From Heterodontus francisci (taxonomy: Eukaryota): a stretch of DNA of 64,000 nt. How positions within the stretch are numbered: position 1 is the first letter of the stretch; each line of letters starts with the position of its first letter. The position numbers and the translations under genes were made by a program. Positions 4,641 through 50,483 of this stretch are shown here, one piece after another. Location of the stretch: assembly GCF_036365525.1 (NCBI RefSeq), contig NC_090399.1:66210862-66274861 (forward strand). The letters are read 5' to 3'. Below the pieces are notes generated by a model. It did not search any database. It was not told the origin of the DNA and worked only from the letters and a program-made list of their open reading frames with translations.

Positions 4641-4805
4641 ACCTCATCCCTATTCCTGTACATATTATGGCACGTTGTTCCCTTAGGGTCAATCCAGCGA
4701 GGACGTTCACAGGGTTTGTGGGAGGACCTGATGAAGGTCAACCCAGAGAGTGCCAAAGGACTGGAGGCTCCACGCACATTGACAAAGCTGACTGGTGCCC
4801 TGCAC

Positions 4806-12037: not shown

Positions 12038-12530
12038 GGGTATTTTACATTCAGTACTAGACCTACTCCCACCTGTAATGTACAGGTTCCGTGCTGAACT
12101 GAGTGTTTAAAGTCCAGGGAAAAACACTCAAAAATCACATTAAAGATTCTCAAACCTGTCATTGTGTTCAACTGGAATATTTAAATCCAGAAATATATCT
12201 CATGTCCAATAAAATTTCTAGCCACCAATGGGAACTCAGTGTTTTCCACATCATCAGTATCCGGGGAAAATCTCTCTGTGCCGGTTACCTTCAGCTTTCT
12301 AATTCAAACACTATTTGTCCAAAAGGAAACTCCAACAGTTTATGGGGATCACATTTCAAACAGAACTTTTCCCAACATTACAAAATTACTGATAACACCC
12401 AAAAAACCAAAATTTATAATTTTAACAAACACATTTAATTTCAGATTGCTTTTGTATTCTTAGTTTCCTTTCATTTGTTCTCATATTCATCAACAGATCA
12501 ACAAAGCAGCAAACATTCCCAGGACAGGTA

Positions 12531-13326
12531 ATCTGGCAGTGAGGGGACACCCCGATGGAGGTCTCTCTACGCGGGAGTCTTCCCCCTTTACATCGGGGAC
12601 CTGGGGTGGAGGGTGTTGCGCAGAGCAGTCCCGTGCAATAGACTTTTAAGTAGGTTCACGGACTCCCAGGCCGCCTGTCCTTTCTGCGGCCTGGTCGAGT
12701 CTGTGTTTCACATATATATGGAGTGTGCGAGGTTGCAGCCCCTGTTTCAGTATTTGAAGGGGCTGCTCCTCAAGTTCTGGCTGCACTTCAGTCCCACGCT
12801 CCTGATCTTTGGGCACCCGGTGAGGGGGTGCATGGGATGGGAGGAGGATCTCCTCGTCGGTCTGCTCCTGGGCCTGGCCAAGGTGGCAATTCACAGGTCC
12901 AGGCTGCAGGCCATCTGGGGGTCCGTCCTCCCTGATTGCCTGCCCCTCTTCCGCGGTTACGTTCGCGCCCGGGTGTCCCTGGAGAAGGAGTATGCGGTGT
13001 CCGGCGGTACGGTTGAGGCCTTCCATGACCGGTGGGCACCGCAGGGACAGGAGTGCATCGTCGATGCCGAAAATGGCATTTAATTTGAGTTTTTGCTTTA
13101 TTCATCTGTTTTTAATAAAGTTATTTTTTTTTAAAATGTATATAAAGGGGGCCTGAGGAATAAAGGCCCCCTCGACATAAAATATATAAAAAGGGCCTGG
13201 AGTATAAAGGTCACCTAGAAAAAAATGGGGTTAGAAAAAGAAAGGGGGCCTGAGGAATAAAGGCCCCCTCGACATAAAATATATAAAAGAGACCTGGGGT
13301 ATAAAGGCCACCTTATATTTAAAAAA
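12531..13326 (+). mobile_element. Tx1-clade non-LTR retrotransposon, 5'-truncated copy (copy 0)
   Basis: ORF 12613-13083 matches the ORF2 C-terminus of the downstream copies (CPFCGLVESVFHIYMEC zinc finger); 3' UTR hairpins and A-tail. Confidence 0.92.
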
Positions 13327-13809
13327 CGGGGTTAGATACAGAGTAAAGCTCCCTCTACACAGTCCCCATCAAATACTCCCAGGGCAGGTACAGCTCAGGG
13401 TTAGAGACAGAGTAAAGCTCCCTCTACACTGTCCTCACCAAACACTCCCAAGCCAGGTACAGCATGGGGTTAGATACAGAATAAAACTCCCTCTACACTG
13501 TCCCCATCAAATACTCCCAGGGCAGGTACAGCTCAGGGTTAGAGACAGAGTAAAGCTCCCTCTACACTGTCCTCACCAAACACTCCCAAGCCAGGTACAG
13601 CACGGGGTTAGATACAGAATAAAGCTCCCTCTACACTGTCCCCATCAAATACTCCCAGGGCAGGTGCAGCTCAGGGTAAGAGACAGAGTAAATCTCTCTC
13701 TACACTGTCCTCACCAAACACTCCCAAGCCAGGTACAGCACGGGGTTAGATACAGAATAAAGCTCCCTCTACACTGTCCCCGTCAAACACTCCCAGGACA
13801 GGTACAGCA
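13327..13809 (+). repeat. 69-bp minisatellite, exactly 7 units (Tx1 target array)
   Basis: Unit CGGGGTTAGATACAGAGTAAAGCTCCCTCTACACTGTCCCCATCAAACACTCCCAGGACAGGTACAGCA; units start at 13327, 13396, 13465, 13534, 13603, 13672, 13741. Confidence 0.95.
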
Positions 13810-14487
13810 CTGGGATTGGCTGCTGTCTGATTTGGGAGCCTGAGTGTTGAGAGCCTCAACGAGGTGCAGCTGAGAGTGCTGGTGGCAGTTGGAGGTTGCA
13901 GACGTGGAGAGAGGAGCTGCACTGAGCAAGGGAGAGCAGCTACCAACAAGCAGAGGAAAACTCCAACAACAGTCTCCATTAAAGAGAAGAAAGGGACATT
14001 TTTTGGAAACAAGGCTTTGTCTGGAGGTGGGTGCTGAACACCAGTAATTTACTTTGGACTGTTGGGGGAGGAACAAGTGGCTGGAACAACAAGGGGTGGG
14101 GCTGCCAATTCAGCAGGAATCTGTGCTGCTGCAAAACCACACAGGGAAGCTCCCTCCCCACCCCAATTGCCAAGCCTGGGTCAGCTGAAGCTGCCCAGCT
14201 AAACAGACGGAAGGGGATAGATAGTGCCTGGGCAGCTTCAGCTGACCCAGGTGAAGACGACTCCCCCAACCAGAAGACCAACTTCAAAGACTGTTTGTTT
14301 TAAGTGTACTGTGAGCACCACCTCCAGAAAGCAAGTCATCCCTTCCAGCCTGCCTTTGCCTCTCCTCTCTTACCTCAGCCTCTCCACTAACCTGTTGTTT
14401 GTTTGTTTGTCTTTTCAAATTTTTCTGTGAGTCGCTGTTATTTAGTGTGCAAGTCCACAATTTGGGGTGGGTTTAGCTCTTAGACCC

Positions 14488-16530
14488 ATGGCAAGCCCTT
14501 CATCACCGGTGGCGGGGCCCTCTACTACCTACGCAGCTGCAGCTTCTGTGGCTGCCCACGTGGCCCCGTCACCCTTTAAATTATTGACATGCAGCCATGG
14601 GGTGAAGAGCTATCCCCACCCCAACATGTCTATTGAGGCCTGCGTTAAGGCAATGGCCGTGGTTGTCGGCCCCTCGGCCATTGTTGCGGCCTCAAAGATG
14701 TATGGGAAGGCTGTGTTCTTTCTGAAGACCGAGCGGGCGGTGTCCCTGGCACTGAGTAAAGGGCTCACTGTGGGGGGGACCTTCCTGCCAGTGGACCCTC
14801 TGGGGGCCACTGCGCATCGGATAATGTTGTCCAATGTCCCACCCTTCATTCCCAGTGAGCTCCTCCTCCCCCACCTGCACCATCTAGGGGAGGTGAGGTC
14901 GGGGATCACCCCAGTCCGGCTTGGTCTTCGGGAGCACAGCCTCCAACATGTCTACTCCTTCCGCCGCCAGTTATTTATGCAGCTGGCGCGGGAGGAGGAC
15001 ACGGAGGGCCAATTTAATGTGGAGTTCCAAGGGACGGCCTACCGCGTCATTTGGACCTCGGACGGGGCGCGGTGCCACGTCTGCAAGGGGGTGGGGCATG
15101 TTCGTAAGAACTGCCCCAACCTCCCGGCCGCCAGCTCCACCTCGGCGGCCCAGAGTGGTTCCACAGCACCTCCTCCCACTCCCCCCGCACATCCAACAGA
15201 CACCGCTCAGTAGGTTCCGGAGGCTGTGGTTTTCACAGCCTCTGGCGGGGAGGGGAGCGTCCGTCCGAGCGGAAGGAAGACGCGGGGAAAAAAGAAACAT
15301 CGTGAGGCGCGTCCCCTGGACACTTTGACTCAACCCGAGCCTGAGCTCAGCCCAAAGCCCATTCCCATGGAATCCACCTGTCCCAGGGCTGGGCTCAGGC
15401 CCAGGGTGACTATAAAGGGAAAAAAGGGTGCGGAGGCGGAGGCCTCTGATGACATGGAGGTCTCTGAGTCTCCGCGCCCAAGTGCGAAAAAGAGGAGAAG
15501 GCACCCCTCCACAGAAATAACACAGGGCCCTGAGGTGCAGGGCCCATCTGTTGGAGGGGAGCTGCCTCCTGTTTCTGGTCCTCAGGTGCCCCCTACCGCC
15601 ACCACCAAGGCTACAAAGTCCGGGCAGGTGCTCCCTATTCCTCAGGATGGAGGGGAGGGGATGGCCCCGGTACATGAGGCCCCTCCTGAAGGAGTAAGTG
15701 GGGCCCTGCTTGTGGTGGGGGAGCCTGGGGAAGCTGCCCATTCCGCCACTGCTACTGGGTCGGGTGTCCTGAATGAAGGGGAGGGCGAGGCCCCAGAGGG
15801 TCGGGCCTCCCAGCCGGAGTCCACCACCAACCAGGAGACACCCGACCCAGTTATAACTGAGAATGCTGCCCCATCTGCTGGGCCTGTGGGTGCTGGCGGA
15901 GCGGGAGATCGCCTCCTCCCTCCGCCTCCAGTCTCGGCTCCGGCTGGTTTCCCGGAGTCGGGAACTTCTGTCTCCCCTGGACCACACATTGCCCTGGGGA
16001 CGGAGGTGGAGGGGGTTCCTGAACCGCTGGTGCCTACAGGCTCCAGTTTCACAATAGAACCCAGAGAGGACTCCTCCGCCATCGATCCTGGGGGTGGGAT
16101 CGTGACGGAGGCGGGACCAGCTGGCGCGGCCGGGACGTCCGCCCCACAGTGTGTGGTGGATGTGTCGGCCGCTGGCGGTGACGACCCGGAGGAGGATGGG
16201 GATTCGGTGCGGGGCACGGAGGATGATCTTGATTCCATCGCCAGTGAGGTGGTGGAGTCCCTCGTGCCTCCCACCGAATCTCCTCTCATCCCCACGGCGG
16301 AACTCCGGGATTTCCTCGCGGCTTGCAGAGGTTGCCGCAATAAAGTTCAGCTGGCCCTCGACCGTTGGTCGAATCTGGTGCTGATCATCCAGTCCATCCG
16401 TGCCGCCCTTAAGATAGCGGGCAAGCACGCGGACGTGAAACTGGTTGAGAGGCGCCGTTTTAATGTGTTCCTCAATGGGTTGCTGGGGGAGTGGAGGGCC
16501 AGGTGCACTTCCACTCCCTCCTCACAGTGA
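14488..16530 (+). pseudogene. Tx1 ORF1 (nucleic-acid-binding protein, ~680 aa) with one nonsense codon
   Basis: MASPS start, ASKMYGKAVFFL, LSNVPPFI, CHVCKGVGHVRKNC; TAG at 15211-15213 where copy C has TCG; same frame continues to 16530. Confidence 0.88.
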
Positions 16531-16562
16531 GGTGTTTGTGACGGGTTTTAATTACCTTTGAC

Positions 16563-19500
16563 ATGAAGATAACCATAGCCAGCCTCAACATCAACGGCAG
16601 CAGAGGGGCTCACCGCAGATTTCACAATCTCTCAGTCCTCAGGGAAGGGAGATACGCGGTGAGCTTTCTGCAGGAAACCCACACCGTTCCGGGAGACGAA
16701 GCCACCTGGCTCCTGGAGTGGCAGTGGGGTGGCTATCTTGTTGGCCCCGACTTTTCAGCCGGAGATCTTGGGGGTCAAGGAGCTAGTGCCGGGCCGCTTG
16801 CTCCACCTCGCCGTTCGCCTGGGTAGCGTGCCGCTCCACTTTGTGAACGTGTACGCGCCCAGGCCTGGCGCGTTGCAAGCGCGCTTCTTTGAAGAAGTGT
16901 CCGCTCTCTTGAGCTCCATCGATAGCGGCGAGTGCATCATCCTCGGGGGGGATTTTAACTGCACCCTCGAGGTGGGGGATCGCTCCAGTCCCCAGCGCGG
17001 CCAAGCGTCGGTGGAGAAGTTGAGGGGACTGATCAGCTCCCTTAACTTGGTGGACGTCTGGCAGAATCTCCATCCCGACTCCAGCGCCTTCACGTGGAGG
17101 TCTGGAGGAGGGGGGTCGCGAATCGACCGCCTCTACATTTCGCAGGCGTACGTCTCCCGCGTTTCGGCGGCCTCCATGCGGCTGGTGCCGTGCTCGGACC
17201 ACCACCTGGTGTGGGCGGAGTTTACTCCGCTCCGCACGCGGGCAGGGTCCGCGTACTGGCACTTTAACAACCGGCTGCTGGAGGACGTGCGATTTCGGGA
17301 CTCGTTCTGTCGATTCTGGGCCGACTGGAGAAGGAAGCAGGGGGGCTTCCCCTCCTTGAGGCTATGGTGGGATGTGGGCAAGACTCACATCCGCGTCTTC
17401 TGTCAGGAGTACGCGAAGGGGTCGACCAAGAGGCGGGTAGCCGAGATCGGGCGCCTTGAGAGGGAGGTGCTTGACTTGGAGTCCCGCCTCGGTCATGCCG
17501 TCGTGGACCCGGCTCTGTGGCAGGCGTACAAAGAGAAGAAGGGCGCGCTGAGGGACCTGCAGCTCATAGGGTCCCGAGGCGCGTACGTGAGGTCGCGGAT
17601 CCAGATCCTGGAAGATTTGGACCGCGCCTCTCCCTTCTTCTACTCGCTGGAAAAATGGCGGGGGGTCCGTAAGCAGCTCATCGAGCTGCTGGCCGACGAC
17701 GGATCCTCCATCACGGATCCGGAGGGAATGGGCCTCCTGGTCCGGACGTATTACAGTGCGTTGTTCTCTCCGGATCCGTCCAGCGAGGATGCGCGCAGAG
17801 TTTTGTGGGAGGACCTGCCGCAGGTCAGCCCGGAGGGCGCCGAAGGATTGGTGGCTCCGCTCACGTTGGCGGAGCTGACTGGCGCCCTCCACCAGCTCTC
17901 GTGGGGCAAATCCCCAGGGCTGGATGGGTTGACCCTGGAGTTCCTCAGGGCGTTCTGGGACGTCCTGGGGGACGATTACGCGCGGGTCCTGGGGGAAAGC
18001 CTGGCGACCGGGGAGATGCCCCTCTCGTGGCGCAGGGCGGTCATCGTCCTGCTGCCGAAGAGGGGCGATCTCCGCCTGCTTAAAAACTGGCGTCCGGTCT
18101 CCCTCCTCAGCACGGATTATAAGATCTTTGCCCGGGCTATGTCTACCCGCCTGTGCTCCGTGCTGGCCCACATGATCCACCCCGACCAGTCCTACACAGT
18201 CCCGGGCCGGTCCATCCAGGACAACATCCACCTGGTCCGGGACCTGATCCATCTTTCCCAGAGGACTGGTCAGTCGGTCGCCTTTCTCTCCCTCGATCAG
18301 GAGAAGGCGTTCGACAGGGTGGATCACGATTACCTTTTCGGGACTCTGCGCGCTTTCGGACTCGGGCCGCATTTCGTGGCCCGGGTCCGACTTTTATACG
18401 CCGCCGCAGAGTGTCTAGTCAAAGTTAACGGGTCCTTGACGGCGCCCCTTCGCTTTGGGAGAGGAGTGCGTCAGGGGTGCCCCATGTCCGGCCAATTGTA
18501 TACCATCTGCGTGGAGCCCTTCCTGTGCCTGCTTCGCAGGAGGTTGACGGGATTGGCTCTGCGCGAGCCGGCCATGCGGGTCGTCCTCTCGGCTTACGCC
18601 GACGACGTGCTCCTCGCAATCACAGATCCCGTTGACTTGCGGAGGATGCGCGACTGCCAGCAGACCTTTTCTGCCGCGTCCTCCGCGAGGATCAATTGGG
18701 AGAAATGTTCCGGACTCCTGGTTGGTCAGTGGCGGGTGGACTCCCTGCCGGAGGAGATGACACCTTTTGCGTGGAGAACCACGCACCTCCTCTATCTGGG
18801 AGTCCACCTTAGCCCCGCTGAGGAAGCCTGGCCGGCAAACTGGCAGGAGTTGGAGGCGAAAGTCACCGCTCGGCTGGGGCGCTGGACAGGACTGCTCCGA
18901 GTGCTTTCCTACAGGGGCCGAGTGTTGGTCATAAACCAACTGGTGGCCTCCATGCTGTGGTACCGGTTGGTCACTTTGGCCCCGCCCCCTGTATTTGCCA
19001 CCAAGATCCGGAAGAAACTCATCGATTTCTTCTGGGGCAAGAGGAAACACTGGGTCTCTGCCGCGGTCCTGAGTCTCCCGATCGAGGAGGGCGGTCAGTC
19101 GCTGGTGTGCGTCCGCACCCAGGCTGCGACTCTCCGCCTTCGGACCCTGCAGAGATACCTGTACGTCGAGCGTCCTCCCAGATGGTGTGCGCTGGCGACG
19201 TATTTTTTCCGCCAGTGTCACTGCCTTCAAGACGACACGCAGCTCCCGGTGGAGTCCGTTAGCCGCGCCTCTCTGAGGGAGTTGCCTGTCTTTTACCGGG
19301 ATCTTTTCCGAGTCTGGAACATGGTCGCCTCCAGTCAGGGCGCTCCCCCGCCGGCGGAGGAGAGCGCCTCGGCTGTCCGGGCGGCCGACTCCGGGGACGG
19401 TCCGGCGGGCGGAGGAGTAGCCGAAACCCCCGGGACGCCCCTCACTGCGGGTGGCGAGGGGGCTCGGGAGTGCGGAGCGATCCCGGCCGAGCTGACCCCC

Positions 19501-20262
19501 GCTCGGCCGGAACTGCTCATCGGACCCAGGCCCCGAAACCCTCCTCGGGAGCCAGTCCCGCACAACCCGAGCCGCCTCTCGGAAATGCCCTCCGTGCCAT
19601 TCCAATCGGCGCGGAGGGGTTTCCTGTACGGGCTGCTCCTGCACACTCTCCACTTCCTCGCCCTCGTCAGCCGGCCGGACACGCCCTGGCGGTCCGCGTT
19701 GCCATCTGGCGGCGAGGGGAAACCTCGATGGAGGTCTCTCTCCGCGGGAGTCTTCCCCCTTTACATCGGGGACCTGGGGTGGAGGGTGCTGCACAGAGCA
19801 GTCCCGTGCAATAGGCTTTTAAGTAGGTTCACGGACTCCCAGGCCACCTGTACTTTCTGCGGCCTGGACGAGTCCGTGTTCCACGTTTATACGGAGTGTG
19901 CGAGGTTGCAGCCCCTATTTGAGTATCTGAAGGGGCTGCTCCTCAAATTCTGGCTGCACTTCAGTCCCACGCTCCTGATCTTTGGGCACTCGGTGCGGAG
20001 GGGCTTGGGCCGGGAGGAGGATCTCCTCGTCGGTCTGGTCCTGGGCCTGGCCAAGGTTGCAATTCACAGGTCCAGGTTGCGGGCCGTCGGGGGGTCCGTC
20101 CTCCCCGATTGCCTGCCCCTCTTCCGCGGTTACGTTCGCGCCCGGGTGTCCCTGGAAAAGGAGCATGCGGTGTCTGCCGGTACGCTTGAGGCCTTCCGCG
20201 ACCGGTGGGCAACGCAGGGACTGGAGTGCATAGTCGACGCCGAGAATGGCATTTTAATTTGA
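16563..20262 (+). pseudogene. Tx1 ORF2 (APE endonuclease, reverse transcriptase, CCHC finger), frameshifted by a 38-bp deletion
   Basis: SLNING, FLQETH, GGDFN, RIDR, SDH; KNWRPVSLL, LDQEKAFDRV, GVRQGCP, AYADD; CTFC..H..C; 38 nt missing at ~16724 relative to copy B. Confidence 0.92.
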
Positions 20263-20400
20263 GTTTTTTGTTTATTTATCTGTTTTTAATAGTGATTTTA
20301 AAAATATAAGTGTGTATATAAAGGGGGCCTGAGGAATAAAGGCCCCCTCGACATACAAAATATATATAATGGGGGCCTGAGGAATAAAGGCCCCCTCGAC

Positions 20401-20638
20401 AAAAAAAAAACGGGGGTTCGATACAGAGTAAAGCTCCCTCTGCACTGTCCCCATCAAACACTCCCAAAAAAAAAGAAAAAAAAACGGGATTACATACAGA
20501 GGAAAGCTCCCTCCACACAAAAAAAAACGGGGTTTGATACAGAGTAAAGCTCCCTCCACAAAAAAAAAAACGGGGTTTGATACAGAGTAAAGCTCCCTCG
20601 ACACTGTCCCATTAAACACTCCCAGGACAGGTACAGCA
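20401..20638 (+). repeat. Stack of poly(A) tracts alternating with truncated and full 69-bp target units
   Basis: Units start at 20411, 20485, 20528 and 20571, each directly after an A-run; only the last is complete. Confidence 0.9.
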
Positions 20639-21346
20639 CAGGGATTGGCTGGTCAATTTGGAGCACTTCCTGCCAGCAATCAGGGGGAGCAGCTGCACCT
20701 GTGTTGCTGCAACTGGAGAGGAGAGAGGAGACTGGAGTTACTGCAGAGAGGTGACTGTAGACAGCTGTATTTACTGTGGAACTGTTGCACTTTTTCAAGA
20801 CTAAGAAGACCTGAGAGTCATTTTGGAGAGGTGGGTGTTGGAACACCAGAGAACTGTTGGTTGTTTGGACTGTTGGGGGAGGGAGAAGGCACCGGAAGAT
20901 CCAGGGGTGGGGCTGCCAAATTCTATAGGGAGCCCCTGTACGAGCTCTTGTGTTTATCTGCCATCCTGCACAAAAGGGGCTCCCTCCCCACCCCCAACTG
21001 TGTGGCTCGGGACGGCTGGAGCTGCCCGGCTGAAGAAAATCCTTATACAACAACAGAAAAGGGAGAGAACCGGGCGGCTCTAACCGACCCGGGCGAAGAA
21101 CCCTCCCCTAACTGGAAGAGTGGACTGTCGACTCTGCAGGAAGGTGCTCCAACCACCAATTGAAGTGTAACATCCTTGCAGCTGTTCTCTCTCTTCCATC
21201 ACTCGGCCACCTATCCTCTCCTCTCCTTGTCCTTTTCAGCCCTATCCTCCTCTATTCCCATCCCCCCCTCCCCCATCATATTGCTTGTGTTAAAGAAAAC
21301 TGTCGTGTGTTTTGTTTCTTGGGGGTGGGCGTAGCTCTGCGACCCC

Positions 21347-23378
21347 ATGGCAAGCCCCTCTTTGCCGGTGGCGGGGCCTTCCCGTTCATATGCTGCTGCG
21401 GCTGCACCTGTTGCCCCGTCACCGTTTGCTTTATTAACATCGAAGCATGGGGTCAAGAGCTATGTCCACCCAAACATGACTATAGAGGCATGCATGAAAG
21501 CAATGGCCGAGGTTGTCGGCCCTTCGGCCATTGTTGCAGCCTCTAAAATGTACGGGAAGGCAGTGTTTTTCCTGAAGACCGAGCGGGCGGTGTCCCTGGC
21601 TCTGAGCAAGGGGCTCACCGTGGGCGGGACCTTTCTGCCAGTGGACCCCCTGGAGGCCACTGCGCAAAGGCTCATTCTATCCAATGTCCCGCCCTTCATT
21701 CCTGGTGAGCTCCTCCTTCCCCACCTGCACCATCTGGGGGAGGTAAAGACGGGGCTCACCCCAGTCCCGCTCAGTCTTCGGGAGAACAGCCTCCGACACG
21801 TGTACTCCTTCCGCCGCCAGTTATTCATGCAGCTGGCGCGGGTGGAGGTGACAGAGGGCCACTTTAATATAGAATTCCAGGGGACGGCCTACCGCGTCTT
21901 CTGGACCTTGGACGGGGTGCGGTGCCATGTCTGTAAGGGGGTGGGGCATGTTCGTAAGAACTGCCCCAACCTCCCGGCTGCCAACTCCAACTTGGCGGCC
22001 CAGGTTGGCGACGCTGCACCTCCTCCCACCCCCCCCTACACCTCCACCAGATACCATTCAGTCGGTACCGGAGGCTGTGGTTTTCACGGCCTCCGGCAGG
22101 GAGGGGGGTGACCGTCCAAGTGGAAGGAAGGCGCGGAGGAGAAATAAACATCGAGAGGCGCGTCCCCTGGACACCGTGAGACTACCCGAGTCTGAGATCA
22201 GCACAAAGCCCGATCTCGGGAAGTCAACTTGCCCCAGGGCTGGGCTCAGGGCCAGGGTGAATAAAAAAAAGGAGAGTGTGGAGGTGGAGGCCTCTGATGA
22301 TATGGAGGTCTCTGAGCCTCCGCACACAACTGGGAAAAAGAGGAGAAGGCACCCCTCCACAGAGGTAACAAGGGGCCCTGAGGCGCAGGGCCCATCTGTT
22401 GGAGGGGAGCTGTCTCCTGTTTCGGGTCCCCAGGCTTCCCCTACCGCCACCACCAAGGCTGCAAAGTCCGGGCAGGAGCACTCTATTCCTCAGGATGGAG
22501 GGGAGGGGAAGGCCCCGGTACTTGAGGCCCCTCCTGAAGGAGTAAGTGGGGCCCTGCTTGTGGTGGGGGAGCCTGGGGACTCCGCCCATTCTGCCACTGC
22601 TACTGGGTCGGGTGCTCTGAATGAAGGGGAGGGCGAGGCCCCAGAGGGTCGGGCCTCCCAGCCGGAGTCCACCACCAACCAGGAGACACCCGACCCAGTT
22701 ATAACTGAGAATGCTGCCCCATCTGCTGGGCCTGTGGGTGCTGGCGGAGCGGGAGATAGCCTCCTCCCTCTGCCTCCAGTCTCGGCTCCGGCTGGTTTCC
22801 CGGAGTCCGGAACTTCTGTCTCCCCTGGACCACACATTGCCCTGGGGACGGAGGTGGAGGGGGTTCCTGAACCGCTGGTGCCTACAGGCTCCAGTTTCAC
22901 AATAGAACCCAGAGAGGACTCCTCCGCCATCGATCCTGGGGGTGGGATCGTGACAGAGGCGGGACCAGCTGGCGCGGCCGGGACGTCCGCCCCACAGTGT
23001 GTGGTGGATGTGTCGGCCGCTGGCGGTGACGACCCGGAGGAGGATGGGGATTCGGTGCGGGGCACGGAGGATGATCTTGATTCCATCACCAGTGAGGTGG
23101 TGGAGTCCCTCGTGCCTCCCACCGAATCACCTCTCATCCCCACGGCGGAACTCCGGGATTTCCTCGCGGCTTACAGGGGTTGCCGCAATAAACTACAGCT
23201 GGCCCTCGACCGTTGGTCGAATCTGGCGCTGATCATAGAGTCCGTCCGTGCCGCTCTTAAGATAGCGGGCAAGCGTGCGGACGTGAAACTGATTGAGAGG
23301 CGCCGTTTTAATGTGTTCCTCAATGGGTTGCTGGGGGAGTGGAGGGCCAGGTGCACTTCCACTCCCTCCTCACAGTGA
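21347..23378 (+). pseudogene. Tx1 ORF1, frameshifted near a C-run (~22030)
   Basis: ORFs 21347-22111 and 21927-23378 together match copy A ORF1 in different frames. Confidence 0.88.
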
Positions 23379-23410
23379 GGTGTTTGTGTCGGGTTTTAAG
23401 TACCTTTGAC

Positions 23411-26400
23411 ATGAAGATAACCATAGCCAGCCTCAACATCAACGGCAGCAGAGGGGCTCACCGCAGATTTCACAATCTCTCAGTCCTTAGGGAAGGGAGA
23501 TACGCGGTGAGCTTTCTGCAGGAAACCCACACCGTTCCGGGAGACGAAGCCACCTGGCTCCTGGAGTGGCAGGGTGGGGTCTACATGAGTCACCTCACCC
23601 CTATTTCTAGTGGGGTGGCTATCTTGTTGGCCCCGACTTTTCAGCCGGAGATCTTGGGGGTCAAGGAGCTCGTGCCGGGCCGCTTGCTCCACCACGCCGT
23701 TTGCCTGGGTAGCGTGCCGCTCCACTTTGTGAACGTGTACGCGCCCAGGCCCGGCGCGTTGCAAGCGCGCTTCTTTGAAGAAGTGTCCGCTCTCTTGAGC
23801 TCCATCGATAGCGGCGAGTGCATCATCCTCGGGGATTTTAACTGCACCCTCGAGGTGGGGGATCGCTCTGGTCCCCAGCGTGGCCAAACGTCGGTGGAGA
23901 AGTTGAGGGGACTGATCAGCTCCCTTAACTTGGTGGACGTCTGGCGGAATCTCCATCCCGACTCCAGCGCCTTCACGTGGAGGTCTGGAGGAGGGGGGTC
24001 GCGAATCGACCGCCTCTCCATTTCGCAGGTGTACGTCTCCCGCATTTCGGCGGCCTCCATGCGGCTGGTGCCGTGCTCGGACCACCGCCTGGTGTGGGCG
24101 GAGTTTACTCCGCGCCGCATGCGGGCGGGGTCCGCGTACTGGCACTTGAACAACCGGCTGCTGGAGGACGTGCGATTTCGGGACTCGTTCTGTCGATTCT
24201 GGGCCGACTGGAGAAGGAAGCAGGGGGGCTTCCCCTCCTTGAGGCTATGGTGGGATGTGGGCAAGACTCACATCCGCGTCTTCTGTCAGGAGTACGCGAA
24301 GGGGTCGACCAAGAGGCGGGAAGCCGAGATCGGGCGCCTTGAGAGGGAGGTGCTCGACTTGGAGTCCCGCCTCGGTCATGCCATCGTGGACCCGGCCCTG
24401 TGGCAGGCGTACAAAGAGAAGAAGGGCGCGCTGAGGGACCTGCAGCTCATAGGGTCCCGAGGCGCGTACGTGAGGTCGTGGATCCAGATCCTGGAAGATT
24501 TGGACCGCGCCTCACCCTTCTTCTACTCGCTGGAATAATGGCGGGGGGTCCGTAAGCAGCTCGTCGAGCTGCTGGCCGACGACGGATCCTCCATCACGGA
24601 TCCGGAGGGAATGGGCCTCCTGGTCCGGACTTATTACAGTGCGTTGTTCTCTCCGGATCCGTCCAGCGAGGATGCGCGCAGAGTTTTGTGGGTGGACCTG
24701 CCGCAGGTCAGCCCGGAGGGCGCCGAAGGATTGGAGGCTCCGCTCACGTTGGCGGAGCTGACTGGCGCCCTCCACCGGCTCTCGAGGGGCAAATCCCCAG
24801 GGCTGGATGGGTTGACCGTGGAGTTCCTCAGGGCGTTCTGGGACGTCCTGGGGGAAAGCCTGGCGACCGGGGAGATGCCCCTCTCGTGGCGCAGGGCGGT
24901 CATCGTCCTGCTGCCGAAGAGGGGCGATCTCCACCTGCTTAAAAACTGGCGTCCTGTCTCCCTCCTCAGCACGGATTATAAGATCTTTGCCCGGGCTATG
25001 TCTACCCGCCTGGGCTCCGTGCTGGCCCACATGATCCACCCCGACCAGTCCTACACGGTCCCGGGCAGGTCCATCCAGGACAACATCCACCTGGTCCGGG
25101 ACCTGATCCATCTTTCCCAGAGGACTGGTCAGTCGGTCGCCTTTCTCTCCCTCGATCAGGAGAAGGCGTTCGACAGGGTGGATCACGATTATCTTTTCGG
25201 GACTCTGCGCGCTTTGGGACTCGGGCCGCATTTCGTGGCCCGGGTCCGACTTTTATGCGCCGCCGCAGAGTGTCTAGTCAAAGTTAACGGGTCCTTGACG
25301 GCGCCCCTTCGATTTGGGAGAGGAGTGCGTCAGGGGTGCCCCATGTCCGGCCAATTGTATACCATCTGCGTGGAGCCCTTCCTGTGCCTGATTCGCAGGA
25401 GGCTGACGGGATTGGCTCTGCGCGTGCTGGCCATGCGGGTCGTCCTCTCGGCTTACGCCGACGACGTGCTCCTCGCAATCACAGATCCCGTTGACTTGCG
25501 GAGGATGCGCGACTGCCAGCAGACCTTTTCTGCCACGTCCTCCGCGAGGATCAATTGGGAGAAATGTTCCGGACTCCTGGTTGGTCAGTGGCGGGTGGAC
25601 TCCCTGCCGGAGGAGATGACACCTTTTGCGTGGAGAACCACGCACCTCCTCTATCTGGGAGTCCACCTTAGCCCCGCTGAGGAAGCCTGGCCGGCAAACT
25701 GGCAGGAGTTGGAGGCGAAAGTCACCGCTCGGCTGGGGCGCTGGACAGGACTGCTCCGAGTGCTTTCCTACAGGGGCCGAGCGTTGGTCATAAACCAACT
25801 GGTGGCCTCCATGCTGTGGTACCGGTTGGTCACTTTGGCCCCGCCCCCTGTATTTGCCACCAAGATCCAGAAGAAACTCGTCGATTTCTTCTGGGGCAAG
25901 AGGAAACACTGGGTCTCTGCCGCGGTCCTGAGTCTCCCGATCGAGGAGGGCGGTCAGTCGCTGGTGTGCGTCCGCACCCCGGCTGCGACTCTCCGCCTTC
26001 GAACCCTGCAGAGATACCTGTACGTCGAGCATCCTCCCAGATGGTGTGCGCTGGCGACGTATTGTTTCCGCCAGTGTCACTGCCTTCAAGACGACACGCA
26101 GCTCCCGGTGGAGTCCGTTAGCCGCGCCTCTCTGAGGAAGTTGCCTGTCTTTTACCGGGATCTATTCCAAGTCTGGAACATGGTCGCCTCCAGTCAGGGC
26201 GCTCCCCCGCCGGCGGAGGAGAGCGCCTCGGCTGTCCGGGCGGCCGACTCCGGGGACGGGTCGGCGGGCGGAGGAGTAGCCGAAACCCCCGGGACGCCCC
26301 TCACTGCAGGTGGCGAGGGGGCTCGGGAGTGCGGAGCAATCCCGGCCGAGCTGACACCCGCTCGGCCGGAACTGCTCATCGGACCCAGGCCCCGAAACCC

Positions 26401-27121
26401 TCCTCGGGAGCCGGTCCCGCACAACCCGAGCCGCCTCTCGGAAATGCCCTCCGTGCCATTCCAATTGGCGCGGAGGAGTTTCCTGTACGGTCTGCTCCTG
26501 CACACTTTCCACTTCCTCGCCCTCATGAGCCGGCCGGACACGCCCTGGCGGTCCGCGTTGCCATCTGGCGGCGAGGGGATACCCCGATGGAGGTCTCTCT
26601 ACGCGGGAGTCTTCCCCCTTTACATCGGGGACCTGGGGTGGAGGGTGCTGCACAGAGCAGTCCCGTGCAATAGGCTTTTAAGTAGGTTCACGGACTCCCA
26701 GGCCACCTGTACTTTCTGCGGCCTGGATGAGTCCGTGTTCCACATTTATACGGAGTGTGCGAGGTTGCAGCCCCTATTTGAGTATCTGAAGGGGCTGCTC
26801 CTCAAATTCTGGCTGCACTTCAGTCCCACGCCCCTGATCTTTGGGCACCCAGTGCGGAGGGGCTTGGGCCGGGAGGAGGATCTCCTCGTCGGTCTGCTCC
26901 TGGGCCTGGCCAAGGTGGCAATTCACAGGTCCAGGTTGCGGGCCGTCGGGGGGTCCGTCCTCCCCGATTGCCTGCCCCTCTTCCGCGGTTATGTTCGCGC
27001 CCGGGTGTCCCTGGAAAAGGAGCATGCGGTGTCCGCCGGCAGGCTTGAGACCTTCCGCGACCGGTGGGCACCGCAGGGACTGGAGTGCATTGTCGACGCC
27101 GAGAATGGCATTTTAATTTGA
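23411..27121 (+). pseudogene. Tx1 ORF2 with one nonsense codon and two in-frame deletions
   Basis: ATG at 23411; TAA at 24536-24538 where copy A has AAA; ILGDF vs ILGGDF; DVLGES vs DVLGDDYARVLGES. Confidence 0.92.
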
Positions 27122-27258
27122 GTTTTTTGTTTATTTATCTGGTTTTAATAAAGTTATTTTAAAAATATAAGTGTGTATATAAAGGGGGCCTGAGGAATAA
27201 AGGCCCCCCTCAACATAAAAAATATATAAAAGGGGCCTGGGGTATAAAGGTCACCTTG

Positions 27259-27397
27259 AAAAAAAAAATGGGGGTTAGAAAAAAAAACGGGGTTAGATAC
27301 AGAGTAAAAAAAAAGAAAAAAAAAAACGGGGTTAGATACAGAGTCAAGCTCCCTCTACACTATCCACATCAAACACTCGCAGGACAGGAAAAAAAAA
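27259..27397 (+). repeat. Second stack of poly(A) and truncated 69-bp target units
   Basis: Units start at 27269, 27288 and 27327 (about 10, 18 and 62 nt), each after an A-run; the final A-run abuts the 5' end of copy C. Confidence 0.9.
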
Positions 27398-30300
27398 CTG
27401 GGATTGGCTCCTCTCTGATTGGGAATACTGAGTGCTGAGTGCCTCAATGAGGTGCAGCTGACAGTGCTGCAGTCAGTTGCTGGAGAGGGAGAGCTGAGGA
27501 GGGAACTGCAAAAAAACCTTTCAACAACTTTTGCTGCAGAGGAGGAAAGACTTTGAAAAAGGCTGTATTTCGAGCACAAAACTTTCATTTCATTTGGACT
27601 GTTGTGGGAGATGAAAGAGGCCAGAAGAACAAGGGGTGGGGGCTATACAATTCTGCAGGGAGCTGTGCAGTTGCACTGAAGTTGCAGGGAAGCTCCCTCC
27701 CCACCTCAATTGCCCAGCCTGAGTCAGCTGAAGCTGCCTGGATAATAGAGACATAAGGATCGAACTAGAGCCTGGGTAGCTTTCGGCTGACCCAGGTGAA
27801 GACCCCTCCCACAACCAGAAGACCGGAAGACCAAAAGTGTTTACAGTGCTCTGAGTACCACCCTTTAAGGGGAAAAAAAGCAAAGTCATCGCTTGCAGCC
27901 TGTCTTTCCCATTTCCTGTATACCCTCAGTCTCTCCCCAAACCTCCTAGTTGGTTTCTTTGTTTGTTTGCTTGCTTGCTTACCTGCAAATTGGGGGTGGG
28001 TTTGGCTCTTGAGCCATGGCAAGCCCATCATCACCGGTGGCGGGGCCTTCTCATACCTATGCGGCTGTAGCCTCTGTGGCCACCCGTGTGACCCCGTCAC
28101 CTTTTAAATTCATTACTTCAAGCCATGGGGTAAAGAGCTAACCCCACCCCAATATGTCTATAGAGGCCTGCGTAAAGGCAATGGCCGAGGTTGTCGGCCC
28201 CTCGGCCATTGTGGCAGCCTCAAAAATGTACGGGAAGGCTGTGTTCTTCCTGAAGACCGAGCGGGCCGTGTCCCTGGCCCTGAGTAAAGGGCTCACTGTG
28301 GGTGAGACTTTCCCGCCGGTGGACCCTCTAGGGGCCACTGCGCAGCGGATAATCTTATCAAACGTCCCGCCCTTTATTCCCAGTGAGCTCCTCCTTCCCC
28401 ACCTGCACCACATGGGGGAGGAGAGGTCGGGGATCACCCCAGTCCGGCTTGGTCTTCGGGAGCACAGCCTCCAACATGTCTACTCCTTCCGCCGCCAGGT
28501 ATTTATGCAGCTGGCGCGGGAGGAGGACTCGGATGGCCAATTTAATGTGGAGTTCCAGGGGACGGTCTACCGCGTCTTTTGGACCTCGGACGGGGCGCGG
28601 TGCCATGTCTGCAAGGGGGTGGGGCATGTTCGTAAGAACTGCCCCAACCTCCCGGTCGCCAGCTCCACCTCGGCAGCCCAGGGTCCTCCCACTCCCCCCA
28701 CACATCCAACAGACACCGCTCAGTCGGTTCCGGAGGCTGTGGTTTTCACAGCCTCCAGCGGGGAGGGGACCGCCCGTCTGAGTGGAAGGAAGACGCGGAG
28801 GCAAAAGAAACATCAAGAGGCGCGTCCCCTGGACACATTGAAACAACCCGAGCCTGAGCTCAGCCCAAAGCCCGTTCTCACGGAATCCACCTGTCCCAGG
28901 GCTGGGCTCAGGCCCAGGGTGACCAAAAAAAAGGAGGGTGCGGAGGCGGAGGCCTCTGATGACATGGAGGTCTCTGAGCCTCTGCGCCCTAGTGTGAAAA
29001 AGAGGTGAAGGCACCCCTCCACAGAGGTAACGAGGGGCCCTGAGGCGCAGGGCCCATCTGTTGGAGGGGAGCTGTCTCCTGTTTCGGGTCCCCAGGTTTC
29101 CCCTACTGCCACCACCAAGGCTACAAAGTCCAGGCAGGAGCTCCCTATTCCTCAGGATGGAGGGGAGGGGAAGGCCCCGGTACTTGAAGCCCCTCCTGAA
29201 GGAGTAAGTTGGGCCCTGCTTGTGGTGGGGGAGCCTGGGGACGCCGCCCATTCTGCCACTGCTACTAGGTCGGGTGCCCTGAGTGAAGGGGAGGGTGAGG
29301 CCGAGGCCCCAGAGGGTCGGCCCTCCCAGCCGGAGTCCACCACCAACATGGAGACACCTGACCCGGTTATAACCAAGAATGCTGCACCATCTGCTGGGCC
29401 TGTGGGTGCTGGTGGAGCTGGAGATGGCCTCCTCTCGCCGCCTCCGGTCTCGGCTCCGGCTGGATTTCCGGAGTCGGGAACTTCTGTCTCCCCTGGACCA
29501 CTCATTGGCCTGGGGACGGAGGTGGAGGGGGGTCCTGAACTGCTGGCGCCCACAGGCTCCAGTTTCACAGTAGAACCCAGAGAGGACTCCTCCGCCATCG
29601 ATCCTGGGGGTGGGATCGTGACGGAGGCAGGGCCAGCTGGCGCGGCTGGGACATCCGCCCCACAGTGTGTGGTGGATGTGTCGGCCACTGGCGGTGACGA
29701 TCCGGAGAAGGATGGGGATTCGGTGCGGGGCACGGAGGATGATCTTGATTCCATCGCCAGTGAGGTGATGGAGTCCCTCGTGCCTCCCACCGAATCTCCT
29801 CTCATCCCCACGGCGGAACTCCGGGATTTCCTCGCGGCTTGCAGGGGTTGCCGCAATAAAGTTCAGCTGGCCCTCGACCGTTGGTTGAATCTGGCGCTGA
29901 TCATCCAGTCCGTCCGTGCCGCCCTTAAGATAGCGGGCAAGCGCGCAGACGTGAAACTGGTTGAGAGGCGCCGTTTTAATGTGTTCCTCAATGGGTTGCT
30001 GTGGGAGTGGAAGGCCAGGTGCACTTCCACTCCCTCCTCACAGTGAGGTGTTGGTGACGGGTTTTAAGTACCTTTGACATGAAGATAACCATAGCCAGCC
30101 TCAACATCAACGGCAGCAGGGGGTCTCACCGCAGATTTCACAATCTCTCAGTCCTTGGGGAAGGGAGATACGCGGTGAGCTTTCTGCAGGAAACCCACAC
30201 CGTTCCGGGAGACGAAGCCACCTGGCTCCTGGAGCGGCAGGGTGCAGCCCTTCTTTGAATATTTAAAGGGGTTGCCCCTCAAGCTTTGGCTGCACTTCAG

Positions 30301-30460
30301 CCCCACGCTCCTGATCTTTCAGCACCTGGTGTGAAGGGGGGTGTGTCAGGAGGAGGATCTCCTCGTCAGTCTGCTCCAGGGCCTGGCCAAGGTGGCAATT
30401 CACGGGTCCAGGTAGTGGGCAGTTGGGGAGTCCGTTTGACTTATTGCCTGCCCCTTTTCT
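27398..30460 (+). mobile_element. Tx1-clade copy C: 5' UTR, disrupted ORF1, start of ORF2 joined to a diverged ORF2 C-terminal fragment
   Basis: ORF1 ATG 28016, frameshift ~28103, TGA 29006, end 30046; ORF2 ATG 30079 breaks at ~30243 into a ...QPFFEYLKG.. region. Confidence 0.9.
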
Positions 30461-30462
30461 GA

Positions 30463-30885
30463 GCATACGAAGATACGAATTAGGAGCAGGAGTAGGCCAC
30501 TCGGCCGTTCGAGCCTGCTCTGCCATTCAATAAGTTCATGGCTGAACTGATTACTCCACATTTCCACCCAGCCCCAATAACTTTCCACCCCTTTGCTTAT
30601 CAAGAATCTATCTACCTCTGTCTTAAACATATTCAAAGACTCTGCTTCTACCGCCTTTTGAGGAAGAGAATTCCAAAGACTTACGATCTTCTGAGAGAAA
30701 AAATTTCTCCTCATCTCTGTCTTAAATGGGCAACCCCTTATTTTTAAACAGTGACTCCTAGTCCTAGATTCTCCTATAAGGGGAAACATCCTTTCCACAT
30801 CCACCCTGTCAAGATCCCTCAGGATCTTATATGTTTCAATCAAGTCACCTCTTACTCTTCTAAACTCCAGCAGATACAAGCCTAG
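30463..30885 (-). mobile_element. CR1 LINE 3' end
   Basis: LEFRRVRGDLIETYKIL...RRNFFSQ on the minus strand plus tail. Confidence 0.85.
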
Positions 30886-32990
30886 CCAAAGGTATCCAAA
30901 CCATGGCTTACAAGGGAGATTAGAGATAGCATTAGATCCAAGGAAGAGGCATATAAATTCACCAGGAAAAAACAACAGACCTGAGGATTGGGAGCAGTTT
31001 AGAATTCAACAAAGGAGGACCAAGGGATTGATTAAGAAGGGGAAAACAGAGTACGAGGGCAAGCTTGCGGGGAACATAAAAACTGATTGTAAAAGTTTCT
31101 ACAGGTGTGTGAAGAGACAAAGATTGGTGAAGACAAATGTAGGTCCCTTACAGTCAGAAACAGGGGAATTTATTATGGAGAACAAAGAAATGGCCGACCA
31201 ACTAAAGGCATACTTTGGTTCTGTCTTCACAAAGGAGGACACAAATGTCATACCAGAAATGTTGGGGAACAGAGGGTTTAGTGAGAGAGAGGAACTGAAG
31301 GAAATCAGTCATGGTACAGAAATGGTATTGGGGAAATTGATGGGATTGAAGGCCGATAAATCCCCAGGGCCTGATGGTCTGCATCCCAGAGCACTTAAGG
31401 AAGTGGCCCTAGAAATAGTGGATGCATTGGTGGTCATCTTCCAAGATTCTATAGACTCTGGAACAGTTCTTACAGATTGGAGGGTAGCTAATGTAACCCC
31501 ACTACTTAAAAAGGGAGGTAGAGAGAAGGCAGGGAATTATAGACCAGTCAGCCTGACGTCGGTAATGGGGAAAATTCTAGAGTCCATTATCAAAGATTTT
31601 ATAGCAGAGCACATGGAGAACAGTGGTAGAATCAGACAGAGTCAGCATGGATTTACGAAAGGGAAATCATGCTTGACAAATCTACGAGAATTCTTTGAGG
31701 ATGTAACTAATAGAGTTGATGAGGGGGAGCCAGTGGATGTGGTTTATTTGGACTTTCAGAAGGCTTTCGACAAAGTCCCACATAAGAGATTAGCATGTAA
31801 AATTAAAACGTATGGGATTGGGGGTAGTGTATTGCGATGGATAGAAAATTGGTTGGCAGACAGGAAACAAAAAGTAGGGATAAATGGGTCTTTTTCCGAA
31901 TGTCAGGCAGTGACCAGTGAGATACCGCAGGGATTGGTGCTAGGACCCCAGCTATTCACAATATACATTAATGATTTAGATGAGGGAACTAAATGTAATA
32001 TCTCCAAATTTGCAGATGACACAAAACTGGGTGGGAGGGTGAGTTGTGAGGAGGATGCAGAGAGGCTTCAGGGTGATTTGGACAAGTTGAGTGAGTGGGC
32101 AAATGCATGGCAGATGCAGTATAATGTAGATAAATGTGAGGTTATCCACTTTGGTAGCAAAAACAGGAAGGCAGATTATTATCTGAAAGGTTATAAACTG
32201 AGAGAGGGGACTGTGCAATGAGACCTGGGTGTTCTCGTACACCAGTCGCTGAAGGTAAGCATGCAGGTGCAACAGGTGGTAAAAAAGGCAAATGGTATTA
32301 GGTAGACAGGTCAGGTGTCTTTAATGCATCAGTGCAGACTCGATGGGCCGAAGGGCCTCTTCTGCACCGAATTATTCTGTGATTCCGTGGTATGTTGGCC
32401 TTCATAGTGAGACGATTTGAGTACAGGAGCAGGGATGTCTTGCTGCATTTATACAGGGCCTTGGTGAGGCCACACCTGGAATATTGTGTGCAGTTTTGGT
32501 CTCCTCATCTGAGGAAGGAGGTTCTTGCTATAGAGGGAGTGCAGCGAAGGTTTACCAGACTGATTCCTGGGATGGCGGGACTGACATATGAGGAGAGATT
32601 GAGTCGGTTAGGATTATATTCGCTGGAGTTCGGAAGAGTGGGGGGAGATCTCATAGAAACCTATAAAATTCTAACAGGACTTGACAGAGTAAATGCAGGA
32701 AGGATGTTCCCGATGGTGGGGGAGTCCAGAACCAGGGGTCATAGTCTAAGGATATGGGGTAAACCTTTCAGGATTGAGATGAGGAGAAATTTCTTCACCC
32801 AGAGAGTGGTGAGCCTGTGGAATTCGCTACCACAGAAAGCAGTTGAGGCCAAAACATTGTATGTTTTCAAGAAGGAGTTAGATATAGCTCTTGGGTTTAA
32901 AGGGATCAAAGGATATGGGGGGAAAGCGGGAACAGGTTACTGAGTTGGATGATCAGCCATGATCATAATGAATGGCGGAGCAGGCTCAAA
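30886..32990 (+). mobile_element. Young 5'-truncated CR1 LINE (RT), same family as 2103-3480
   Basis: 397-aa and 183-aa RT ORFs (NYRPVSLTS, KFADDTKL); 89-bp CR1-tail insert at 32299-32387 flanked by a TGGTAT duplication. Confidence 0.92.
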
Positions 32991-46620: not shown

Positions 46621-46844
46621 AAAGAATGCTGACTTGGGACACAAACACTAACACTGTCATTCTGTTTGAATATTTTACTCACACATTTCCCATTTCTCTC
46701 CCTCTCCTGGTTTAATTTCTTCACATCGTTTAGTTTTGCCTTAATTTGTGGTTCCGAAAGAACATCCTCTCCTCCGCTCACTGGACCCAGTGTCGACATT
46801 TCCTTGTTCACCATCTTCAGACCCGGAGCCAACCCCCATCCACC

Positions 46845-48200: not shown

Positions 48201-48285
48201 CCCTGTCCCCCTCCCCCAAACTTACATCACCCAGAGTCCGCACGGCCCCAGTGAGCATTTTGGCCATTTTCTCTCCAATTCCTAC

Positions 48286-48390: not shown

Positions 48391-48502
48391 CTGATAAATA
48401 GAACCAGAGAGAGAGCGTGAATCAGACATCAGGGAACAGACACAGGCAGAGAGAGAGAGCGAGAGGACACACAGAGCCCCACGCGCTGTAATATCCCGGG
48501 AC

Positions 48503-50465: not shown

Positions 50466-50483
50466 TGTGGGAGAAAGACTTAC

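What the first reader, a model, noticed from the sequence alone, without database searches (positions are those of the whole stretch)
12511..30460. Head-to-tail array of Tx1 retrotransposons all inserted at one position of a 69-bp minisatellite: candidate new target-specific family
Seen in sequence: four co-oriented Tx1 copies. Each intact 3' end (copies 0, A, B) is poly(A) followed by (C/T)GGGGTT.G, the first base of the 69-bp unit. The 5' ends of A (13810) and B (20639) follow ...CAGGACAGGTACAGCA, the last bases of the unit. Established: Tx1-clade APE elements are often sequence-specific (Tx1L, Kibi/Koshi microsatellites, Keno U2 snRNA, Mutsu 5S, Dewa tRNA spacers). Inference: this family's endonuclease recognises the unit junction ACAGCA|CGGGGTTAG of a shark minisatellite. 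I do not know of this target being described, but I could not check Repbase or Dfam.
Basis: partly seen in the sequence, partly recalled or inferred. Interest (0 to 1): 0.9.

Follow-up and report, generated by a model that had tools for sequence, protein, structure and literature searches.

The report
Shark Tx1 retrotransposon homing to satellite
A jumping gene of the frog-Tx1 type has inserted again and again at one exact nucleotide of an abundant 69-bp repeat in a shark genome; target-specific insertion is the known habit of this group, so only the target appears to be new.

Summary
Window 12531-30460 holds four co-oriented non-LTR retrotransposon copies. Their ORF2 (endonuclease plus reverse transcriptase) is colinear with Xenopus Tx1L ORF2 and 49% identical to it. 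Every recognisable 3' end is poly(A) followed by (C/T)GGGGTTAG, position 1 of a 69-bp unit. The two full-length 5' ends that abut the repeat follow its last bases, ...CAGGACAGGTACAGCA.

The copies differ by 6-12%, and A and B have unlike 5' UTRs, so they are separate insertions and not a segmental duplication. The unit is not part of the element:
- the 5'-truncated copy still has a unit tail upstream;
- copy C is separated from the unit by A9;
- the unsplit site ACAGCA|CGGGGTTAG occurs in many contigs of public runs;
- in a second organism the unit is hugely abundant while this family's UTRs are nearly absent.

Best reading: a target-specific Tx1-clade family that nicks the bottom strand at 5'-CTAACCCCG|T-3' of a satellite. 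That its endonuclease makes the choice is inferred. Recognition of the upstream half-site is doubtful.

Tx1 families that target satellites, transposons, microsatellites and small RNA genes are already known, so I class this as a new member of a known kind. This scan noted the same association on many other pieces of this genome, and one earlier follow-up reached the same verdict.

The parts
12510..12530 (+). Remnant of the unit's tail (caaacattcccaggacaggta) directly upstream of the 5'-truncated copy c0. Non-repeat, AT-rich DNA lies further upstream.
   Evidence: 19/20 match to unit positions about 44-64
12531..13225 (+). Copy c0, 5'-truncated. It holds the last about 173 codons of ORF2, a 3' UTR with two hairpin modules, and A7.
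   Evidence: 89-90% to A and B; Tx1L residues 1120-1292
13226..13234 (+). Nine-base piece of the unit start (TGGGGTTAG) between two A-runs. The same tag, also with the T variant, follows copy B.
13235..13326 (+). A5G, then an 80-nt 3'-UTR fragment (13241-13320), then A6. This is a second, extremely 5'-truncated insertion at the same site.
   Evidence: (87% to A 6511-6587)
13327..13809 (+). Seven 69-bp units with a 138-bp two-unit periodicity. This is the target repeat.
   Evidence: abundance and unit|unit junctions in public runs
13810..20410 (+). Copy A, full length (6.6 kb). 5' UTR from CTGGGATTGGCTG. ORF1 14467-16530 has one in-frame stop. ORF2 16563-20262 has a frameshift near Tx1L residues 55-63. 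3' UTR 20263-20400, then A10.
20411..20638 (+). Unit pieces of 56, 34 and 32 bases, each followed by an A-run, then one whole unit (20571-20638) that abuts copy B.
20639..27268 (+). Copy B, full length. Its 5' UTR is unlike A's over about 650 bases. ORF1 21347-23378 has a frameshift. ORF2 23411-27121 has one in-frame stop at 24536. 3' UTR 27122-27258, then A10.
27269..27397 (+). Unit pieces of 10, 18 and 62 bases, each followed by an A-run. The last A9 abuts copy C.
27398..30460 (+). Copy C. It has an A-type 5' UTR and an ORF1. An internal deletion joins the start of ORF2 to its C-terminal part near 30240. The copy is cut off at 30460, where unrelated repeat sequence begins.

Best explanation
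This is a target-specific non-LTR retrotransposon family of the Tx1 clade (L1 superfamily; apurinic-type endonuclease plus reverse transcriptase). It integrates by target-primed reverse transcription at one fixed phosphodiester bond of an abundant 69-bp satellite.

Shown: the position of every 3' junction. On the element's strand the bond lies between ...GGTACAGCA and CGGGGTTAGATACAG...

Inferred: the first nick is on the bottom strand, 5'-CTAACCCCG|TGCTGT-3', and the ...CCCCG-3' end primes cDNA synthesis on the poly(A) tail. That would explain why each insertion ends as poly(A)|CGGGGTTAG.

The 5' junction is looser. It is flush with the unit end for A and B, lies at unit position about 64 for truncated c0, and follows an A-run for C.

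Repeated hits at the same bond, by full-length, 5'-truncated and nearly poly(A)-only copies, built the head-to-tail array. The short unit pieces between A-runs are most likely of two kinds: local copies made at insertion (variable target-site duplications, or slippage of a 43-bp module), and in one case a read-through tag inherited in the RNA.

Because most hits have poly(A) upstream of the nick, the recognised bases probably lie downstream of it. That the element's own endonuclease makes the choice is inferred from Tx1L, R1 and related elements; it is not shown here.
For: Tx1 identity:
- ORF2 of A aligns colinearly with Xenopus Tx1L ORF2 residues 69-1292 at 49% identity, including the C-terminal Cys/His motif.
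- Pfam finds Exo_endo_phos and RVT_1.
- Human L1 ORF2p matches far more weakly.

Fixed site:
- Nine A-run|YGGGG junctions, all at unit position 1, against 0.26 expected.
- Four of them carry recognisable element 3' UTR sequence.

Independent events:
- A/B are 93.6% identical, A/C 88%, c0 89-90%.
- The 5' UTRs of A and B are unalike over about 650 bases.

The unit is separate from the element:
- 5'-truncated c0 has a unit tail upstream.
- C is separated from the unit by A9.
- In one search, 17 contigs of organism A and 51 of organism B run from the A/B-type unit end (...ACAGCA, 13810) back into a unit start, which is the unsplit site.
- In organism B the summed depth of the unit is 4e5-6e6, while this family's 3' and 5' UTRs are at 2-70.
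- In organism A, 19 contigs show varied A-rich sequence before the unit start, and 32 show poly(A) after unit position 34.

Other loci: notes of this scan report the same association on many other pieces of the genome. I did not check them.
Against:
- The small A-run/unit-piece modules may be slippage products or inherited tags rather than separate insertions. The number of independent events in this window is therefore 4-5, not 9 or more.
- Endonuclease specificity is untested.
- None of the four copies has intact ORFs.
- Near-identical low-depth contigs of A's 5' UTR in organisms B and C could be orthologous copies or cross-sample carry-over, which blurs the between-species contrast.
Confidence: 0.8

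Rival explanations
1. Homing is guided mainly by RNA-target pairing and not by a sequence-reading endonuclease. Read-through transcripts carry the first bases of the unit at their 3' end. These anneal to the nicked bottom strand, as proposed for R1Bm, and the element's 5' end also resembles the unit start. The endonuclease itself would have only modest specificity.
For: - c0 and B, which are independent copies, share the same tag ...CACCT(A/T)G-A(n)-TGGGG(G)TTAG-A(n), including the T variant. The tag therefore seems to be inherited in the RNA.
- The primer end ...CCCCG-3' has no complementarity to poly(A).
- All three 5' ends read C(T/A)GGGATTGG against the unit's CGGGGTTAG.
- A 960-nt contig of a possibly RNA run joins the 3' UTR to the unit (joint 13210>13330).
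Against: - Copy A has no such tag: poly(A) is followed directly by a 56-base unit piece.
- The 5' resemblance is only about 7 of 10 bases, and it overlaps an ATTGG (CCAAT-box) motif that could be promoter sequence.
- Run X6 is only guessed to be RNA.
- Tx1L endonuclease is reported to be target-specific (cited in PMC4494074).
Confidence: 0.12
2. The array arose from one or two insertions followed by unequal crossing-over, segmental tandem duplication or gene conversion within the satellite. The shared junction would then be inherited and not re-created.
For: - The locus is tandemly repetitive.
- The 43-bp A-run plus 34-base module is repeated three times at 91%, and U32 matches the next unit 31/32, so some local duplication did occur.
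Against: - The A and B 5' UTRs are unalike over about 650 bases although the rest is 93.6% identical.
- C carries the A-type UTR but is 88% identical.
- The junction structures differ: 7 units, 1 unit plus pieces, or pieces plus A9. c0 is 5'-truncated at a different point.
- The same junction is reported at other loci.
Confidence: 0.05
3. The 69-bp units are part of the element itself, as 5' monomers or a 3' tail. The insertions are ordinary L1-like hits into A-rich tails of earlier copies.
For: - Some LINEs have tandem 5' monomers.
- In this window the unit is seen only next to elements.
Against: - 5'-truncated c0 still has a unit tail upstream.
- Copy C begins after A9 without a complete unit.
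- The number of units between copies varies from 0 to 7.
- In organism B the unit is about 10^4-10^5 times deeper than this family's UTRs, with many unit|unit junctions.
- The nick leaves ...CCCCG-3', not a T-run, at the unsplit site.
Confidence: 0.03

Closest known systems
Tx1L of Xenopus laevis (inserts into the non-autonomous piggyBac transposon Tx1D)
   Same: - ORF2 is colinear and 49% identical over the whole length.
- A long ORF1 of about 690 codons.
- A poly(A) 3' end.
- Insertion at one fixed position of a repeated host sequence.
- The closest named protein in the search.
   Different: The target is a free-standing 69-bp satellite unit and not a site inside a DNA transposon. The target sequence is unrelated as far as I can tell; the Tx1L target paper (PMC85248) is not held in the library. 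The host is a cartilaginous fish.
Other target-specific Tx1-clade families: Kibi (TC)n, Koshi (TTC)n, Keno (U2 snRNA), Mutsu (5S), Dewa (tRNA arrays), Tx1-Mar (Mariner-N4_AMi), and families marked 'Sat' in Kojima 2015 Fig. 3 (PMC4494074)
   Same: Same clade and same habit: repeated, co-oriented, often tandem insertions at one position of a multicopy sequence. Target-derived sequence is sometimes found at the element ends.
   Different: The target is different.
R1Bm / R2 (rDNA-specific LINEs)
   Same: Precise 3' junction, a looser 5' junction, tandem and truncated copies at one site, and possible use of read-through target sequence at the RNA 3' end.
   Different: These are different clades. 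R2 uses a restriction-like endonuclease. R1 has no poly(A)-only dependence, and the target is an rRNA gene. The resemblance is in how it works, not in membership.

Membership tests
Tx1 clade of non-LTR retrotransposons (L1 superfamily) | ORF2 with an N-terminal apurinic-type endonuclease and a reverse transcriptase | tested here: met
   Pfam Exo_endo_phos (full domain in copy B) and RVT_1
Tx1 clade of non-LTR retrotransposons (L1 superfamily) | RT/ORF2 groups with Tx1L rather than with L1 or other clades | tested here: inconclusive
   The best named hit is Tx1L ORF2, 49% identical and colinear over residues 69-1292. Human L1 ORF2p reaches only E 1e-70 over part of the length. No phylogeny against Repbase clade references could be run.
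Tx1 clade of non-LTR retrotransposons (L1 superfamily) | C-terminal Cys/His motif of ORF2 and a poly(A) 3' end | tested here: met
   CTFCGLDESVFHVYTEC aligns with Tx1L CPFCGKGESVFHAYFTC. A-runs of 6-11 stand at every 3' end.
Target-specific LINE family (criterion of Kojima 2015: one sequence type in more than 20% of flanks) | The same flanking sequence at independent insertions genome-wide | tested here: inconclusive
   All 4 recognisable 3' ends in the window meet it. Contigs of public runs show poly(A)|unit junctions and the unsplit site.
Target-specific LINE family (criterion of Kojima 2015: one sequence type in more than 20% of flanks) | The target exists independently of the element (unsplit sites) | tested here: met
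   Contigs running from the A/B-type unit end (...ACAGCA, 13810) back into a unit start: 17 in X1 and 51 in X5. The unit is far more abundant than the element's UTRs in organism B.
Target-specific LINE family (criterion of Kojima 2015: one sequence type in more than 20% of flanks) | The endonuclease cleaves the target sequence specifically | not testable with these tools
   Needs an in vitro nicking assay.

The most novel reading that the evidence does not exclude
The family homes by a two-part mechanism that is unusual for an L1-superfamily element. A fixed bottom-strand nick is combined with pairing between the nicked target and target-derived tags carried at both ends of the RNA (3' A(n)-TGGGGTTAG-A(n); 5' CNGGGATTGG). 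The satellite then serves as a conserved 'safe harbour' across related sharks. According to an unchecked scan note, it also collects trans-mobilised host mRNA retrocopies.
Probability: 0.15. Interest if true: 0.6.

Novelty: new member of a known kind. Interest (0 to 1): 0.4.

Why it matters
Target-specific LINEs are natural examples of precise, RNA-templated DNA insertion. Each new pair of endonuclease and target adds a data point on how apurinic-type endonucleases read sequence, a question of interest for programmable insertion.

This family is young: its copies carry only one or two lesions each. Its target is long, well defined and abundant, and the unsplit site is available in the same genome. 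These features make a nicking test straightforward.

For genome annotation, the finding explains a recurrent structure in this shark assembly, namely head-to-tail LINE stacks inside a 69-bp satellite with poly(A)/unit-piece modules. It also warns against reading those modules as a separate repeat family.

Tried and rejected
Tools that gave nothing:
- Exact-pattern scans of metagenome contigs for the junction and for the unit, and of genome contigs for the unit: no match.
- The search of earlier findings by sequence: blank.
- The Tx1L endonuclease paper PMC85248: not held.
- Full-text search for a 20-mer of the unit: 0 papers. 'L1-Tx1' with 'shark': 0 papers.
- Protein Atlas on ORF1 of copy B: no usable hit. 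Pfam on the ORF1 pieces: no family.

Ideas rejected:
- The unit derives from a small RNA gene, as with other Tx1 targets. Rfam gives only chance-level matches, E 0.25 or worse, and none lies on the unit array.
- L1-like preference for T-runs. The unsplit site has none at the nick.
- 3' transduction from distant source loci as the general origin of the unit pieces. It does not fit U32 and U18, which match their right-hand neighbour 31/32 and 18/18 and share a rare TTTGA variant. It remains likely for the TGGGG(G)TTAG tag shared by c0 and B.

Full report
WHAT IS THERE. Window 12531-30460 carries four copies of one non-LTR retrotransposon family, all on the + strand.
- c0 (12531-13225) is 5'-truncated to the last about 173 codons of ORF2 plus the 3' UTR.
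- A (13810-20410) and B (20639-27268) are full length at 6.6 kb.
- C starts at 27398. An internal deletion joins the first about 55 codons of ORF2 to its C-terminal part near 30240. It is cut off at 30460, where an unrelated repeat begins.

Pfam finds Exo_endo_phos and RVT_1 in ORF2. ORF2 of A aligns colinearly with Xenopus Tx1L ORF2 (YTX2_XENLA, P0007) from residue 69 to 1292 at 49% identity, including the C-terminal Cys/His motif. Human L1 ORF2p is a much weaker match. The closest annotated proteins are from Heterodontus francisci (93%) and Hemitrygon akajei (73%). The host is therefore an elasmobranch, probably a shark close to or identical with Heterodontus; that is inference.

None of the copies is intact:
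- A has a frameshift near Tx1L residues 55-63 and one stop in ORF1.
- B has one in-frame stop in ORF2 (24536) and a frameshift in ORF1.

THE JUNCTIONS. The unit is CGGGGTTAGATACAGAGTAAAGCTCCCTCTACACTGTCCCCATCAAACACTCCCAGGACAGGTACAGCA. Seven copies lie between c0 and A (13327-13809), with a two-unit (138-bp) periodicity.

Every element 3' end is an A-run followed by position 1 of the unit, at 13226, 13327, 20411 and 27269. Five more A-run|CGGGG junctions lie at 20485, 20528, 20571, 27288 and 27327. Nine of the 33 A-runs of 6 or more on the + strand are followed by YGGG(G/A), against 0.26 expected. The one such case on the - strand is unrelated sequence.

On the 5' side:
- A and B start as C(T/A)GGGATTGGCTG right after ...CAGGACAGGTACAGCA.
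- C has the same 5' end but follows CAGGACAGG + A9.
- Truncated c0 follows a 21-base unit tail (12510-12530), beyond which the DNA is not repeat.

INDEPENDENT INSERTIONS, NOT DUPLICATION. A and B are 93.6% identical from about base 650 onward, but their first 650 bases barely align. C has the A-type 5' UTR yet is only 88% identical. c0 is 89-90% identical to A and B. The spacers also differ: seven units, one unit plus three pieces, or three pieces plus A9. A segmental duplication would have copied UTRs and junctions alike.

THE UNIT IS A SEPARATE, ABUNDANT SATELLITE. Four lines of evidence:
- A 5'-truncated copy flanked upstream by a unit tail, and a full-length copy separated from the unit by A9, are both incompatible with the unit being the element's 5' end.
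- Laying Logan contigs of four public runs on 12900-14400 showed summed word depth over the unit of 6e4-7e5 in organism A and 4e5-6.4e6 in organism B.
- This family's 3' UTR (13104-13307) and A's 5' UTR are at 8e3-8.5e4 and 5e3-2.5e4 in A, but only 2-70 and 5-17 in B.
- Contigs that run from the A/B-type unit end (...ACAGCA, 13810) back into a unit start, which is the unsplit target, number 17 in A and 51 in B.

In A, 19 contigs carry varied A-rich sequence just before the unit start. Another 32 carry poly(A) after unit position 34, and 9 show the 43-bp 'A-run + 34 bases' module repeated.

Depth from contigs is not copy number, and near-identical low-depth contigs of A's 5' UTR in organisms B and C may be orthologues or carry-over. 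The contrast of four to five orders of magnitude is still hard to explain if the unit belonged to the element. Rfam gives no hint that the unit derives from an RNA gene.

HOW IT MOST LIKELY WORKS. The fixed poly(A)|CGGGG junction is what target-primed reverse transcription predicts if the first nick is always on the bottom strand at 5'-CTAACCCCG|TGCTGT-3'. This is inference from the junctions and from the established TPRT mechanism.

The 5' junction is variable, as in other site-specific LINEs. Because most junctions have poly(A) and not ACAGCA upstream of the nick, and C sits directly behind A9, later hits seem to have used a site that keeps only the downstream half. Recognition therefore probably lies in CGGGGTTAGATACAG... 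and not in the junction as a whole. All nine junctions are of the ...GATACAG/CATACAG type; the alternate CAGGGTTAGAGACAG units of the 138-bp periodicity are not hit. The sample is too small and not independent enough to conclude from this.

The short unit pieces between A-runs have at least two origins:
- U32 (20528-20559) matches the following whole unit 31/32 and shares its rare TTTGA variant. U18 matches the next piece 18/18. These are local copies, either variable target-site duplications of almost poly(A)-only insertions or slippage of the module.
- The tag ...CACCT(A/T)G-A(n)-TGGGG(G)TTAG-A(n), by contrast, is shared by c0 and B, which are independent copies. It seems to travel in the RNA, which implies read-through into the target and re-polyadenylation in a source copy.

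That raises the rival that RNA-target pairing contributes to precision, as proposed for R1Bm. I give it 0.12 as the main determinant.

COMPARISON WITH WHAT IS KNOWN. Target-specific insertion is the hallmark of the Tx1 clade:
- Tx1L inserts into Tx1D.
- Keno targets U2.
- Kibi and Koshi target microsatellites.
- Tx1-Mar targets a Mariner family.
- The legend of Fig. 3 in Kojima 2015 (PMC4494074) lists 'Sat, satellites' among known targets.

Tandem, co-oriented stacks at one site are described there too. I found no paper that describes this shark family or prints the unit. Repbase and Dfam could not be consulted.

Within this scan, many first-reader notes on other pieces of the same genome describe the same association. 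One follow-up (s1-872051) reached the same verdict. One note (s1-874058) reports host mRNA retrocopies at the same position. I used these only as leads.

I therefore could not tabulate flanks of other copies. The genome-wide claim rests on contig evidence and on unchecked scan notes. Endonuclease specificity is untested.

VERDICT.

Noticed in passing
window 14173-14264 (A), 21008-21098 (B), 27717-27807 (C): A 25-bp hairpin in the 5' UTR is conserved in all three copies although the B UTR is otherwise unlike A's. Four pairs are kept through changes on both sides. With only three sequences this is a lead, not proof of a structured RNA or promoter palindrome.
   Followed up: partly
window 20322-20396, 27183-27258, 13146-13218: The 3' UTR ends in two tandem modules. 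Each is a GGGGGCC...GGCCCCC stem whose loop holds AAUAAA/UAUAAA (z = -5.6 for copy A). The polyadenylation signal thus sits in a hairpin next to the poly(A) tail, and could be an RT recognition element.
   Followed up: partly
window 13810-13822, 20639-20651, 27398-27410: All three full-length 5' ends begin C(T/A)GGGATTGGCT. This resembles the unit start CGGGGTTAG and also contains ATTGG (an inverted CCAAT box). A second ATTGG follows in C.
   Followed up: no
window 12900-14400 in runs X1 and X6: Run X6 (148 M letters, guessed to be RNA) shows the unit at the same summed depth as the 17-fold larger DNA run X1 of the same sample, while the element's UTRs scale with run size. The satellite may be strongly transcribed, or the library may be enriched for it.
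   Followed up: no
window 46840-64000: Long C-rich minisatellite arrays lie downstream of the element array: 72-bp x19, 47-bp x41, then a 30/60/90-bp array of over 12 kb that runs off the window end. They are unrelated to the 69-bp unit.
   Followed up: no
window 30461-33000 and 4660-4805: Other repeats. Unrelated repeat sequence abuts truncated copy C at 30461, with ORFs at 31028-32221 and 32392-32943. A 147-bp fragment at 4660-4805 is 76% identical to the RT region of copy A.
   Followed up: no
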